In this document: positions 37,335 through 45,734 of the stretch, in pieces
Position numbering within the stretch: position 1 is the first letter of the stretch
How the letters are laid out: the number at the start of each line of letters is the position of its first letter
Program-made: the position numbers and the translations under genes
The notes under the pieces: generated by a model
Seen by the model: only the letters and a program-made list of their open reading frames with translations
What the model was told of the DNA's origin: nothing
The model's database searches: none
From: Haliotis cracherodii
Taxonomy: Eukaryota
DNA length: 64,000 nucleotides
Reading direction: 5' to 3'
Assembly: GCF_022045235.1 (NCBI RefSeq)
Contig: NW_027266264.1
Location: forward strand, 8,246,001-8,310,000

Positions 37335-38612
37335 GTCTACCAGGAGTTTGTCATTACACTCAAGGTGCTCCCTCTGCCAGGAGCTAGTCATTACACTCAA
37401 GGTGCTCCCTCTGCCAGAAGCTAGTCATTTCATGGAGGGTACTTCCTCTGCCAGGAGCTAGTCATTACATGGAGGGTATGTAGGTACTCCCTCTGCCAGG
37501 AGCTAGTCATTACCTGGAGGGTGTGTCGATGCTCCCTCTGCCAGGAGCTAGTCATTACCTGGAGGGTATGTAGGTACTCCCTCTGCCAGGAGCTAGTCAT
37601 TACCTGGAGGGTATGTAGGTACTCCCTCTGCCAGGAGCTAGTCATTACATGGAGGGTATGTAAGTACTCCCTATGCCAGGAGCTAGTCATTACCTGGAGT
37701 GTATGTCGGTGCTCCCTCTGCCAGGAGCTAGTCATTACCTGGAGGGTATGTAGGTACTCCCTCTGCCAGGAGCTAGTCATTACCTGGAGGGTATGTCGAT
37801 GCTCCCTCTGCCAGGAGCTAGTCATTACCTGGAGGGTATGTAGGTACTCCCTCTGCCAGGAGCTAGTCATTACATGGAGGGTATGTAAGTACTCCCTATG
37901 CCAGGAGCTAGTCATTACCTGGAGTGTATGTCGGTGCTCCCTCTGCCAGGAGCTAGTCATTACCTGGAGGGTATGTAGGTACTCCCTCTGCCAGGAGCTA
38001 GTCATTACCTGGAGTGTATGTCGGTGCTCCCTCTGCCAGGAGCTAGTCATTACCTGGAGGGTATGTAGGTGCTCCCTCTGCCAGGAGCTAGTCATTACCT
38101 GGAGGGTATGTAGGTACTCCCTCTGCCAGGAGCTAGTCATTACCTGGAGGGTATGTAGGTTCTCCCTCTGCCAGGAGCTAGTCATTACCTGGAGGGTATG
38201 TAGGTACTCCCTCTGCCAGGAGCTAGTCATTACCTGGAGGGTATGTCGGTACTCCCTCTGCCAGGAGCTAGTCATTACCTGGAGGGTATGTAGGTACTCC
38301 CTATGCCAGGAGCTAGTCATTACCTGGAGGGTATGTAGGTACTCCCTCTGCCAGGAGCTAGTCATTACCTGGAGGGTATGTAGGTACTCCCTCTGCCAGG
38401 AGCTAGTCATTACCTGGAGGGTATGTAGGTTCTCCCTCTGCCAGGAGCTAGTCATTACCTGGAGTGTATGTCGGTGCTCCCCCTGCCAGGAGGTAGTCAT
38501 TACCTGGAGGGTATGTAGGTACTCCCTCTGCCAGGAGCTAGTCATTACCTGGAGGGTATGTAGGTTCTCCCTCTGCCAGGAGCTAGTCATTACCTGGAGG
38601 GTATGTAGGTAT
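37335..38612. repeat. 45-bp minisatellite, about 26 full copies plus shorter precursor units
   Basis: Unit ccaggagctagtcattacctggagggtatgtaggtactccctctg. Confidence 0.97.
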
Positions 38613-43225: not shown

Positions 43226-43811
43226 GTGCTACACATTCTCTCATTAGTCGCATGAGGCTGTCCTATGTGGCATTTCACTGATAATGGTTCTCCATCCGAG
43301 GTCAGTTCTCACTGAAACAGAAATGATTATATGAAGTCTTCACTCCCTGGTATGTACTTAATTTGCCTAATAAGGACACGATCAATCTGTCTAGACTTTG
43401 ATGTTAGAGATGAGGAACTTACTACTGTACACATAATGTATTTGAACTTAGCGCTGTGTTTACATGCAATGGCATACCAAGTGGGAAGTGACTTTTCAGT
43501 CAAGAAAAACCTGTGAAAATCTCTGACTTGCAGTTGTGGGTATACTTATTTACACAGCTGTGACTTAGAAGCTTGTTGAGTTTGGGAGCTGACTTCAAAC
43601 AACATTATTTGCATATGTTGTGTGTATATGTATATGAGCATCTGAAAAACAAATTCATACAGCATCATGTAGCATTGATAGACTGACCTGTGTGTGGCAA
43701 ATCACTTAGGCCAAGTAGCAGGAGCATATGTGGTAGCCCTGCCGTTATTGCATGTTTGCTGTACAGGATTGAGTGTACAGGAGACCTGGGCATTCTGGGT
43801 GTGATTCCCAA

Positions 43812-44202
43812 TGTAGCAGGGCGTGGAGTCATCCTACAGATGACATCCTCACCTTGTCAGCTTGCTGACAGGGTTAACCTCTTTGGTCATGTGGACAAGG
43901 CATCCGACCTATGGTCAGAAGGTCTGTGGTTCGAATCCCATCACAGGACTCAGAAATTTTATGGCTGCTACATTGGCACCCAACGTGGGGCTGAGCAAAA
44001 TAAGCCTCAGTACCCTACTATGCGGCCCGGGATGTGCCTTCTGTTGACGGGGGAGTCTTTAGCAGGGCGTGGAGTCATCCCACAGATGACATCCTTACCT
44101 TGTCAGCTTGCTGACAGGGTTAACCATTTTGGTCATGTGGACAAGGCATCTGACCTCGGATCAGAAGGTCCGTGGTTCGAATCACATCACTGGACCGCTA
44201 TA
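43812..44202 (+). mobile_element. Complete non-autonomous miniature LTR retrotransposon (TRIM) with tRNA-derived LTRs (Helenus-like)
   Basis: LTR1 43812-43972 (TGTAGC...GCTACA). PBS TGGCACCCAACGTGGGGC at 43974-43991 (tRNA-Lys CUU type, 1 mismatch). PPT GACGGGGGAG at 44046-44055. LTR2 44058-44202. 4-bp TSD CCAA at 43808-11 and 44203-06. Confidence 0.9.
44123..44196 (+). pseudogene. tRNA-Arg(TCG)-derived cassette inside LTR2 (more mutated copy in LTR1, about 43877-43950)
   Basis: TGGACAAGGCATCTGACCTCGGATCAGAAGG closely resembles metazoan tRNA-Arg(TCG). Anticodon stem TCTGA/TCAGA with TCG at 44156-58 and B box GGTTCGAATC(A/C). The acceptor stem does not pair, so it is not a functional tRNA. Confidence 0.75.
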
Positions 44203-45734
44203 CCAACATGGGCACATTGGTGACTTCATGTAACCAGGGATTCAAGCCCCCAACTCACACATGTCTTTAAAACAGTCAAGGTCTATGGAGAAATGTAGTG
44301 TATATGTTACTCTGAATAATGTGAATTCTCGAACAATATCATAGCATTTGCCATTGGTGCTTAGCTAGAATATGTCAGTCCTCATCAGATGTAATCACCA
44401 TAGACTTGTGAGAAGGGCCATGAAAGGAACAAAGGGAGAAACAGTAATTTTGAAGCCAGCTTTCATTGTATTGTTTCAATGTCTTATTTCTTTGCAATGA
44501 CCAATTTTCATGAATTACCATATGCAGAATTTCCCTGTAGACCAGACTGTGAGAAATCGTTTCCAACAACCAAGTTTAGCGTTTGGCTGAAGAAATGTTT
44601 TTGATATTTATGACTTTGTCTATGTTTCACTTTGTATGAAACTAATGATATTATGGAGACATTCGTGACCTTGTATCCTGAGAAAGGATCTGTGTGTCGT
44701 CATACAGTATAAGGTTTATAAGCGATATGTATTCGGTACAGTTTCATTTAGTTTCATGTTTGTCTTTAAAAGGAATTATTTGTATGAAACTTTGTTCAGT
44801 TAATTACAACTTCCTGTAAATATTCCTGTAAATTTTGTTTCTGAAATATCTTGTTTCATTAACCACTTAAATCTTTAAGCTGATGAACTATTTTCTTAAT
44901 CTAAGGGAAATGTATGCCTTTGGTCAAGTGCTCTTAAAAATAGACAAGAGGCTTTAGTTTACCTGGTTTTTGAGGTATGCATATGATTATCTGGCTAAAT
45001 CAGTCAAATAATGACATCATAAAATATCCCAGCTTTGAAGTTGGGAGAAATGACATCTTCCGTACTGTAAGCCGCATGATTTATAACCACATATTAATTT
45101 TCTCCAACCACATCCATCATGGGTTTCTTTAAGCATTTAATCATCTTGCTATAAATCCTGAAGAGTTGCAAACCCAAATTCCTATAGGCATATCCATCAT
45201 AATTTCATGAAGGTATATTTCAACTCCCCAAAAACAAGCTGGTCATTTTTCAACTAGTCATCACGTTTTTGTCATTAAGTCAATTAGTTGGTCGTTCTCG
45301 TTCACATCATGCACCTTTCTCGTTCCCGACTGAATTTGGCCCACTCTGCAATTAACAAGCAATGAACGAGGAAACCTGACAGACCTCCCTTTCATCTTTG
45401 CCTCTTTGACAGCAAGGAACATCTCCGTGGTAGATATATGTACAACAAAGCAGGGTTAACTATTGATCATTCATATATAAAAGTAGATAATTGTGTCATT
45501 ATATTCCTTGTGAAGTACAAAATTTACTCTAAATATCAACTATGTTTCAGAAAGCTGTGTCTTTCATAAGGAATTATATGGATGATTGATGATCATTACA
45601 ATTCCTTAAATAAGCTGTTCAGGGAGCATTTGTTTACTGGATGTGAAACAGTGACACACAACGTGATAGCAAGAGTGATTGATAGGACAGTAGAATTTTC
45701 TAGAAGCTAGAAATAAATACATTGGATAATTGAG

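What the first reader, a model, noticed from the sequence alone, without database searches (positions are those of the whole stretch)
43808..44206. Miniature LTR retrotransposon whose LTRs carry a tRNA-Arg-derived Pol III promoter
Seen: two LTRs (161 and 145 bp, about 12 substitutions over ~138 aligned nt), TG...CA termini on LTR1, an 18-nt PBS complementary to tRNA-Lys(CUU), a G-rich PPT, only 85 bp of internal non-coding sequence and a 4-bp TSD (CCAA). Each LTR holds a near-complete tRNA-Arg(TCG)-like sequence with A/B boxes, preceded by two hairpins (gtcatc/gatgac and tgtcagc/gctgaca). Established: TRIMs depend on autonomous LTR elements, 4-bp TSDs are typical of many animal Gypsy integrases, and plant Cassandra carries 5S sequence in its LTRs. 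From memory, tRNA-bearing TRIMs have been named Helenus. Inference: this is a SINE/LTR hybrid parasite that uses one tRNA as promoter (Arg) and another as primer (Lys), and it may be an undescribed molluscan family.
Basis: partly seen in the sequence, partly recalled or inferred. Interest (0 to 1): 0.85.

Follow-up and report, generated by a model that had tools for sequence, protein, structure and literature searches.

The report
Miniature LTR retrotransposon carrying tRNA-Arg remnant
This is an old copy of a roughly 430-bp non-coding LTR retrotransposon whose repeats contain a decayed tRNA-Arg gene; such elements were named Helenus in 2024, but this family, in what is probably a gastropod, appears to be undescribed and recently active.

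Summary
Window 43812-44202 is LTR (161 bp), PBS, short non-coding core, PPT, LTR (145 bp), flanked by the 4-bp duplication CCAA.

It belongs to a dispersed family:
- At least 1,450-1,900 LTRs and at least 540 internal regions occur in the genome.
- The usual length is 428 bp (161+106+161).
- In an unbiased sample, 31 of 39 copies have perfect, different 4-bp TSDs (control 2 of 156).
- LTR pairs are 88.7-100% identical, so the family was active recently.
- Solo LTRs and 267-bp tandem arrays exist.

The PBS pairs over 19 nt with this genome's own tRNA-Lys(CTT). LTR positions 74-135 derive from its own tRNA-Arg(TCG), but 8 nt of the D arm are missing. The segment therefore has no canonical A box and does not fold as a tRNA. 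The B box and one T4 run are intact.

By definition this is a Helenus-type TRIM ("TRIMp3", Kojima 2024). Its motifs are absent from the published Helenus sequences, whose molluscan members are all pteriomorph bivalves carrying a different tRNA. Two 8-unit hemocyanin genes suggest a gastropod-like host.

No autonomous partner was found.

First readers of this scan noted the same family seven times elsewhere in this genome.

The parts
43808..43811 (.). 5' target-site duplication CCAA
   Evidence: Same 4 nt at 44203-44206. Other copies of the family have different 4-bp TSDs.
43812..43972 (+). 5' LTR, 161 bp, TGTAGC...GCTACA
   Evidence: Full-length match to LTRs of other copies.
43828..43844 (+). 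Hairpin 1 in the U3-like part (GTCATC / GATGAC)
   Evidence: Predicted in the fold of a young copy's LTR.
43855..43870 (+). Hairpin 2 in the U3-like part (TGTCAGC / GCTGACA). The stem extends to about 10 bp.
43885..43946 (+). tRNA-Arg(TCG)-derived segment of LTR1 (LTR positions 74-135), with an 8-nt D-arm deletion
   Evidence: Alignment to the genome's own tRNA-Arg(TCG) genes.
43928..43938 (+). Perfect B-box match GGTTCGAATCC
   Evidence: position mapped.
43957..43960 (+). TTTT run, a possible Pol III terminator. It is the only T4 run in a canonical LTR plus internal region.
   Evidence: and direct reading of copies. Terminator function is inferred.
43974..43992 (+). [quoted passage not shown] This copy has one mismatch.
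43973..44057 (+). Non-coding internal region, 85 nt. It lacks 21 nt that most copies have (106 nt).
   Evidence: The deletion junction occurs at only 4 places in the genome.
44046..44056 (+). Polypurine tract GACGGGGGAGT
   Evidence: The motif occurs at 538 places in the genome.
44058..44202 (+). 3' LTR, 145 bp. It is degraded: it starts TT, has a 16-nt deletion that removes the T-run, and ends TATA.
44131..44195 (+). tRNA-Arg-derived segment of LTR2. The anticodon arm still reads CTCGGATCAGAAG. The last base of the B box is mutated (44174-44184).
44203..44206 (.). 3' target-site duplication CCAA

Best explanation
The feature is an old, slightly degraded copy of a non-autonomous, non-coding LTR retrotransposon in miniature. 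[quoted passage not shown]

Shown:
- LTR-PBS-core-PPT-LTR anatomy.
- A 4-bp target duplication.
- A dispersed family of a thousand or more LTRs with different TSDs, solo LTRs and tandem arrays.
- Very young copies.
- A PBS complementary to this genome's tRNA-Lys(CTT).
- An LTR insert descended from this genome's tRNA-Arg(TCG).

Inferred:
- Its RNA is reverse-transcribed from a tRNA-Lys primer and integrated by the RT and integrase of an autonomous LTR element acting in trans. That partner is probably Gypsy-like (4-bp TSD, target preference Y-W-W-R).
- Transcription may start from the internal Pol III promoter left in the tRNA remnant. The B box is intact and only degenerate A-box-like matches remain.
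- On that model the single T4 run at LTR 146-149 marks the R/U5 border. It must be read through in the 5' LTR and used in the 3' LTR.
- That would give U3 of about 1-60, R of about 60-149 and U5 of 150-161.

The window copy itself is probably dead. Its LTRs are 8% diverged, one terminus is mutated, its PBS has a mismatch and the 3' T-run is deleted.
For: - Anatomy and TSD of the window copy.
- Family size: 1793 first-look candidates; U3 motif at 1457 places, internal motif at 538, tRNA-head motif at 1931, reversed-pattern controls 0-1.
- Boundaries and TSDs: most of the 28 copies have TSDs. In the unbiased sample, 31 of 39 TSDs are perfect against 2 of 156 for shifted flanks.
- One solo LTR has the TSD CTAC.
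- A three-LTR array lies inside a single TSD (L044, L027).
- LTR-pair identity is 88.7-100%, median 95.8%, and eight copies are at least 99.4%.
- PBS: 19 contiguous nt complementary to the mature tRNA-Lys(CTT) of this genome.
- tRNA-Arg origin.
- B box and T-run positions.
- The element matches the published definition and dimensions of animal Helenus: LTR 128-193 bp, internal portion 87-139 bp, 4-bp TSD, tRNA-Lys PBS among bivalve families.
Against: - No RNA evidence for any transcript, start or end.
- The canonical A box is destroyed by the D-arm deletion. Only 8-9 of 11 matches remain, at LTR 73-83 and 81-91.
- A T4 run about 85 nt after the presumed start would stop much of any Pol III transcription before the PBS.
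- No autonomous partner sharing the PBS-side, PPT-side or terminal sequence was found.
- Conservation across copies is uniform, so it gives no sign of selection on the boxes.
Confidence: 0.85

Rival explanations
1. It is an ordinary Pol II-transcribed TRIM. On this reading the tRNA-Arg fragment is a passenger, for example picked up by RT template switching or by a SINE or tRNA insertion into an LTR. It has no promoter role.
For: - The A box is lost through the 8-nt D-arm deletion.
- The tRNA models do not recognise the segment.
- The T4 run lies inside the would-be transcript.
- Conservation is no higher in the boxes than elsewhere.
Against: - The B box is a perfect 11 of 11 match.
- An A-box-like 9 of 11 match lies 33 nt upstream of it, which is the canonical spacing.
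- The LTR has no obvious TATA or other Pol II signals in its 72-nt U3-like part (direct reading).
- By analogy, Cassandra is reported to produce transcripts from its Pol III promoter (as cited in PMC10886601).
Confidence: 0.4
2. It is a one-off tandem duplication of a tRNA-derived SINE, not an LTR element.
For: There are two direct repeats containing a tRNA-like sequence.
Against: - Dozens of examined copies on many contigs share the same outer boundaries, PBS, PPT and copy-specific 4-bp TSDs.
- The tRNA part lies in the 3' half of the repeat, not at its head.
- There is no A-rich or microsatellite tail.
Confidence: 0.01
3. It is a fragment (1.6 monomers) of a 267-bp satellite.
For: Arrays of LTR plus core with a 267-bp period exist, for example five units at C4:19.483 Mb and L047.
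Against: - About three quarters of sampled loci are exactly LTR-core-LTR, bounded by TG..CA and a TSD.
- Some arrays themselves sit inside a single TSD (L044 CATG, L027 TAGT). That fits unequal LTR recombination of an inserted element, as is known for Cassandra and LTR-11_DR.
Confidence: 0.02
4. The LTRs spread functional tRNA-Arg genes.
For: Older copies keep the TCG anticodon context.
Against: - No cloverleaf forms. The D arm is deleted and the acceptor stem has decayed.
- ARAGORN finds none, and Rfam scores are below threshold.
Confidence: 0.01

Closest known systems
Helenus (TRIMp3), especially the bivalve Helenus families of Kojima 2024 (PMC10886601)
   Same: [quoted passage not shown]
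- Total length about 430 bp, within the published 311-1263 bp.
- 4-bp TSD.
[quoted passage not shown]
- PPT ending GGGGGAG(T)A.
- TGT...ACA termini.
- Tandem arrays and solo LTRs.
- No functional tRNA.
   Different: - The tRNA source is Arg(TCG) with an 8-nt D-arm deletion. The published molluscan families align to a Lys/Thr-like tRNA with an intact ...TAGCTCAGT.GGT... A box.
- None of eight family-specific motifs occurs in the paper's sequence file.
- The host carries two 8-unit hemocyanin genes. It is therefore not one of the listed pteriomorph bivalves and is probably a gastropod.
Cassandra (plant TRIM with 5S rDNA in its LTRs) and Ajax (nemertean)
   Same: A non-autonomous LTR element whose LTRs carry a Pol III-type small-RNA gene remnant, with a promoter box and a T-run. 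Both also form tandem arrays.
   Different: They carry 5S rRNA, not tRNA, and give 5-bp TSDs. No 5S match was found here.
biv-TRIM (Satovic et al. 2019, PMC6934838)
   Same: An animal (mollusc) TRIM with canonical copies, solo repeats and tandem forms.
   Different: biv-TRIM has 202-218-bp repeats, a 77-80-bp core with the conserved TGATCCCAAAGGAC, the PPT GGGGAGA and no clear PBS. The present core lacks that motif and has an unambiguous PBS.
tRNA-derived SINEs (SINE2)
   Same: A tRNA-derived internal promoter remnant, short non-coding length and high copy number.
   Different: SINEs are mobilised by LINEs. They have the tRNA head at the 5' end, a 3' tail and variable-length TSDs. Here there are LTRs, a PBS, a PPT and fixed 4-bp TSDs.

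Membership tests
Helenus / TRIMp3 (Kojima 2024) | Two LTRs around a short non-coding internal portion; whole element under 1000 bp | tested here: met
   161 + 85 + 145 bp in the window; 161 + 106 + 161 = 428 bp in most copies.
Helenus / TRIMp3 (Kojima 2024) | tRNA-derived sequence inside the LTRs | tested here: met
   LTR 74-135 aligns to this genome's own tRNA-Arg(TCG): 52 of 61 aligned bases identical, local score 43 against a shuffle maximum of 24, and a 25-nt exact run in copy L031.
Helenus / TRIMp3 (Kojima 2024) | PBS complementary to a tRNA just after the 5' LTR, and a PPT just before the 3' LTR | tested here: met
   19 contiguous nt match tRNA-Lys(CTT) plus CCA. The PPT GACGGGGGAGTA abuts the 3' LTR in the copies examined.
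Helenus / TRIMp3 (Kojima 2024) | 4-bp TSD (animal Helenus) | tested here: met
   31 of 39 perfect 4-bp TSDs against 2 of 156 in the control. CCAA in the window.
Helenus / TRIMp3 (Kojima 2024) | Conserved box A (TRGCY...YGG) and box B (GGTTC) | tested here: inconclusive
   Box B is perfect (GGTTCGAATCC, LTR 117-127). The native box A is interrupted by the D-arm deletion. The best A-like matches are 9 of 11 at 73-83 and 8 of 11 at 81-91 (and direct reading).
Helenus / TRIMp3 (Kojima 2024) | Transcription by RNA polymerase III | not testable with these tools
The paper itself says this has not been validated for Helenus.
A published Helenus family (sequence identity) | Sequence match to one of the consensus sequences in the paper's Data S1 | tested here: not met
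   Of the 12 motifs looked up, eight specific to this family (9-16 nt) are absent. Four shorter or generic ones (GGCCGCTACA, TGTAGCAGG, the anticodon-arm 7-mers, the first 13 nt of the PBS) occur in otherwise unrelated families. This was a text search across wrapped lines, so a single miss is possible but eight are not.
Cassandra / Ajax | 5S rRNA-derived sequence in the LTR | tested here: not met
   No 5S rRNA match in Rfam scans of the window copy and of young copies at E up to 10.
Retrozyme | Hammerhead ribozyme in the LTRs | tested here: not met
   No ribozyme family reported.
tRNA-derived SINE | tRNA head at the 5' end, LINE-type 3' tail, variable-length TSDs, no LTR, PBS or PPT | tested here: not met
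biv-TRIM | 202-218-bp repeats and a core with the conserved TGATCCCAAAGGAC | tested here: not met
   The repeats are 161 bp and the motif is absent from the core on direct reading.

The most novel reading that the evidence does not exclude
This may be an independently born and currently active TRIMp3 lineage in a gastropod. On this reading a D-arm-deleted tRNA-Arg remnant still recruits Pol III, through an intact B box and a makeshift A box at canonical spacing. The single T4 run would define the R/U5 border through partial read-through. With copies whose LTRs are 100% identical, it would be a tractable animal system to test whether Pol III transcripts can serve as templates for LTR-type reverse transcription.
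Probability: 0.35. Interest if true: 0.55.

Novelty: new member of a known kind. Interest (0 to 1): 0.4.

Why it matters
Helenus/TRIMp3 elements were defined only in 2024, and their Pol III transcription has never been shown in animals.

A family built on a different tRNA (Arg), in a mollusc outside the pteriomorph bivalves, supports the published idea that such elements arise repeatedly. It also widens their known host range.

The family has 1,450-1,900 or more tRNA-like LTR copies, so it will inflate tRNA or SINE-like annotations in this genome. Its very young copies make it usable for insertion-polymorphism markers and for a direct test of Pol III-driven LTR retrotransposition.

For the window itself, the copy is an ordinary, dead repeat.

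Tried and rejected

2. Autonomous partner. None of these turned one up:
- The LTR end plus PBS with non-family upstream bases gave 0 places.
- The family-specific PBS extension with a foreign upstream sequence gave 5 places, all 5'-truncated copies or fragments.
- The PPT plus TGT with a foreign LTR start gave 2 places, both fragments.
- A 14-nt Lys PBS not followed by G gave 15 places: 12 mutated or diverged copies of this family and 3 loci (L114, L115, L121) with no ORF of 90 aa or more after the PBS within 1.5 kb.

3. An excess of T-run deletions in 3' LTRs among the first 30 loci. This was a query bias, because the window copy has that deletion. It was not seen in the unbiased sample.

4. 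L124 looked like a diverged sister family whose LTR ends right after the tRNA part. Its junction is unique in the genome, so it is a single old deleted copy.

5. Selection on promoter boxes from copy conservation or age classes. The family is too homogeneous, with one diagnostic site.

6. Species identity and other hosts:
- Sequence strings searched in papers gave nothing.
- Two metagenome scans were blank.
- The protein atlas was uninformative.
- Only the hemocyanin test bears on the host.

7. Natural copies (L029, L101) served as references.

I did not try to read more sequence by other means.

Full report
**Observation.**
- A 161-bp LTR (43812-43972, TGTAGC...GCTACA).
- One T, then a primer-binding site (43974-43992).
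- An 85-nt non-coding core that ends in the polypurine tract GACGGGGGAGT (44046-44056).
- A 145-bp second LTR (44058-44202).
- CCAA on both sides (43808-43811 and 44203-44206).

The LTRs are 92% identical over 136 ungapped nt. Both short hairpins in the first 60 nt of the LTR are there.

The copy is degraded. LTR2 begins TT and ends TATA, it has lost 16 nt including its T-run, and the PBS carries one mismatch.

**It is a real mobile family.**
A search of the window's own genome (1.18 Gb) gave 1793 first-look candidates. Every one of the scored full-length hits lay on a different site, at 77-91% identity.

In the first 30 loci the outer boundaries, PBS and PPT are the same. Most copies have their own 4-bp duplication, such as TATG, TAAC, CGCG, AAAG or CTTA.

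That set was ranked by likeness to the window copy. I therefore drew a second sample of 60 loci from the positions of an internal-region motif.
- Most are exactly 428 bp (161 + 106 + 161).
- 31 of 39 copies with both ends intact have a perfect 4-bp TSD, against 2 of 156 for shifted control flanks.
- TSDs prefer Y-W-W-R, and 9 of 51 are palindromic.
- LTR pairs are 88.7-100% identical, with a median of 95.8%. Eight copies are at least 99.4%, and L101 is 100%. The family was therefore active very recently, while the window copy (92%) is among the older ones.

Motif counts with up to two mismatches are 1457 (U3-like part), 1931 (tRNA-like head) and 538 (core). Reversed-pattern controls gave 0-1. 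LTRs thus outnumber cores by about 3 to 1.

A solo LTR with the TSD CTAC was verified (L033). Arrays of LTR plus core with a 267-bp period exist, and some lie inside a single TSD (L044, L027).

The 21-nt shorter core of the window copy is rare. Its junction occurs at four places in the genome.

**The two tRNAs.**
This genome's tRNA-Lys(CTT) genes lie in a 297-bp tandem array on contig 2. Their 3' end plus CCA is complementary to the PBS over 19 contiguous nt.

The genome's tRNA-Arg(TCG) genes were found with a short pattern and confirmed by ARAGORN. LTR positions 74-135 align to them.
- 52 of 61 aligned positions are identical.
- The local score is 43, against 13.9 +/- 2.2 (maximum 24) for 500 shuffles.
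- One copy (L031) keeps 25 consecutive identical nt across the anticodon arm.

All copies lack 8 nt of the D arm. The segment does not fold as a cloverleaf. ARAGORN reports no tRNA in the 28 copy loci scanned, about 60 LTRs. Rfam's tRNA model reaches 15.4 bits only on the window's LTR2 and nothing on young copies.

So 'derived from tRNA-Arg(TCG)' is well supported. 'Near-complete with A and B boxes' is not.
- The B box (GGTTCGAATCC, LTR 117-127) is perfect.
- The native A box is broken.
- What remains are two A-like matches: 9 of 11 at LTR 73-83, 33 nt before the B box, and 8 of 11 at 81-91.
- A single TTTT lies at LTR 146-149. By direct reading of the copies it is the only T4 run in an LTR plus core.

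**How it most likely works.**
Shown: the structure and population features of an LTR retroelement that cannot encode anything.

Inferred:
- Its RNA is packaged, primed by tRNA-Lys(CTT), reverse-transcribed and integrated by proteins of an autonomous LTR element.
- That partner is probably Gypsy-like, as argued for animal Helenus from PBS similarity and 4-bp TSDs (PMC10886601).
- Transcription may come from the Pol III promoter remnant.
- With a start some 10 nt upstream of LTR 73 and termination at the T-run, the LTR would divide into U3 (about 1-60, holding the two hairpins), R (about 60-149) and U5 (150-161).
- This model needs partial read-through of the T-run in the 5' LTR.

I could not test any of this. 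Conservation among copies is flat, with a majority fraction of 0.95-0.98 in every LTR segment outside CpG sites. Only one age-diagnostic site was found, the third anticodon base.

A Pol II-driven TRIM with a passenger tRNA fragment therefore remains a serious rival for the transcription step. I put it at about 0.4.

**Partner element.**
Four pattern designs were meant to catch elements that share the PBS side, the PPT side or the termini but not the family's LTR. They returned only truncated or mutated family copies and three unrelated loci with no ORF of 90 aa or more downstream of the PBS.

After no more genome DNA could be cut out. The partner is unidentified.

**Comparison with what is known.**
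Kojima (2024, PMC10886601) defined Helenus as TRIMs with a tRNA-derived sequence in their LTRs. The paper grouped them with Cassandra and Ajax as 'TRIMp3'.

According to that paper:
- Animal Helenus make 4-bp TSDs.
- Bivalve families have LTRs of 128-193 bp and cores of 87-139 bp.
- Several bivalve families use a tRNA-Lys PBS.
- Tandem arrays occur.
- Pol III use is explicitly unvalidated.

The present family meets every structural criterion, so it is a Helenus by definition.

It is not one of the published families.
- Eight motifs specific to it are absent from the paper's sequence file.
- The published molluscan families carry a different, Lys/Thr-like tRNA part with an intact A box.
- That survey worked by homology from seed families in related genomes, so it would have missed a family like this one.

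In Mollusca the paper lists only pteriomorph bivalves. This genome has 16 hemocyanin beta-sandwich units arranged as two neighbouring genes of eight units. From general knowledge that is the gastropod-type arrangement, and pteriomorph bivalves lack hemocyanin. The host is therefore probably a gastropod, though I could not name it.

No paper in the searchable library reports Helenus in gastropods. Repbase and Dfam could not be searched.

biv-TRIM (PMC6934838) differs in repeat length, core motif and lack of a PBS.

**Earlier notes of this scan.**
First readers flagged the same family at seven other places in this genome. Those notes agree with this one but are unchecked. My family-level tests were made on other copies.

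**Verdict.**
The promoter function is unproven, and the kind of element is already known.

It is a new member, and probably a new host class and an independent tRNA capture, of a known kind. Interest is moderate.

Noticed in passing
G000:C1:30241995-30278458 (L034-L040): A long tandem array of tRNA-Arg(TCG) genes with a 307-bp period, about 100 or more units. ARAGORN reads some units as tRNA-SeC(TCA). The array units have A, not G, after the anticodon, unlike the single gene in L032 and unlike the TRIM remnant.
   Followed up: partly
G000:C2:45989455-46017053 and beyond (L041-L043): More than 200 tandem tRNA-Lys(CTT) genes with a 297-bp period, later alternating between 212 and 297 bp. This is the tRNA that primes the TRIM.
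   Followed up: partly
G000:C78:1318421-1319111: A 49-bp-period satellite whose unit matches the first 50 nt or so (hairpin part) of the TRIM LTR. It lies next to full copies at 1317856-1318423.
   Followed up: no
L058 (G000:C2:20114650-20116050), minus strand, upstream of the core: Where the 5' LTR should be there is a foldback element of about 240 bp with about 88-bp inverted arms. Its outer 22 nt resemble the LTR's 5' terminus (19 of 22). L067 has a similar junction, and L115 shares part of the arm sequence.
   Followed up: partly
L005 3334-3391, L012 3219-3290, L006 1082-1153 (minus), L112 about 1575-1700: An unrelated, abundant tRNA-derived SINE-like repeat (head GGTCGGGTAGCCTAGTGG...), scoring 26-27 bits with Rfam tRNA. 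One copy is inserted into a TRIM core in L112.
   Followed up: no
G000:C78:7546637-7561658 and 7602322-7622521: Two neighbouring hemocyanin genes, each with eight Haemocyan_bet_s units. Used here only as a clue to the host.
   Followed up: partly
L085 and L086 (G000:C5:6055129 and 6096457): Two copies 41 kb apart with the same TSD (CTTG), the same 10-nt LTR deletion and the same terminal change. This is a segmental duplication, not two insertions.
   Followed up: no
L104 (G000:C4:13034133-13037167): A TRIM core with only 36 nt of LTR, sitting inside DNA that reads like a Tc1/mariner transposase remnant.
   Followed up: no
window 37430-38590 (minus strand): A 386-aa open frame with a weak DUF5641 match (27.5 bits). 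It is probably a remnant of an LTR-retrotransposon pol gene. No Lys-type PBS is nearby.
   Followed up: no
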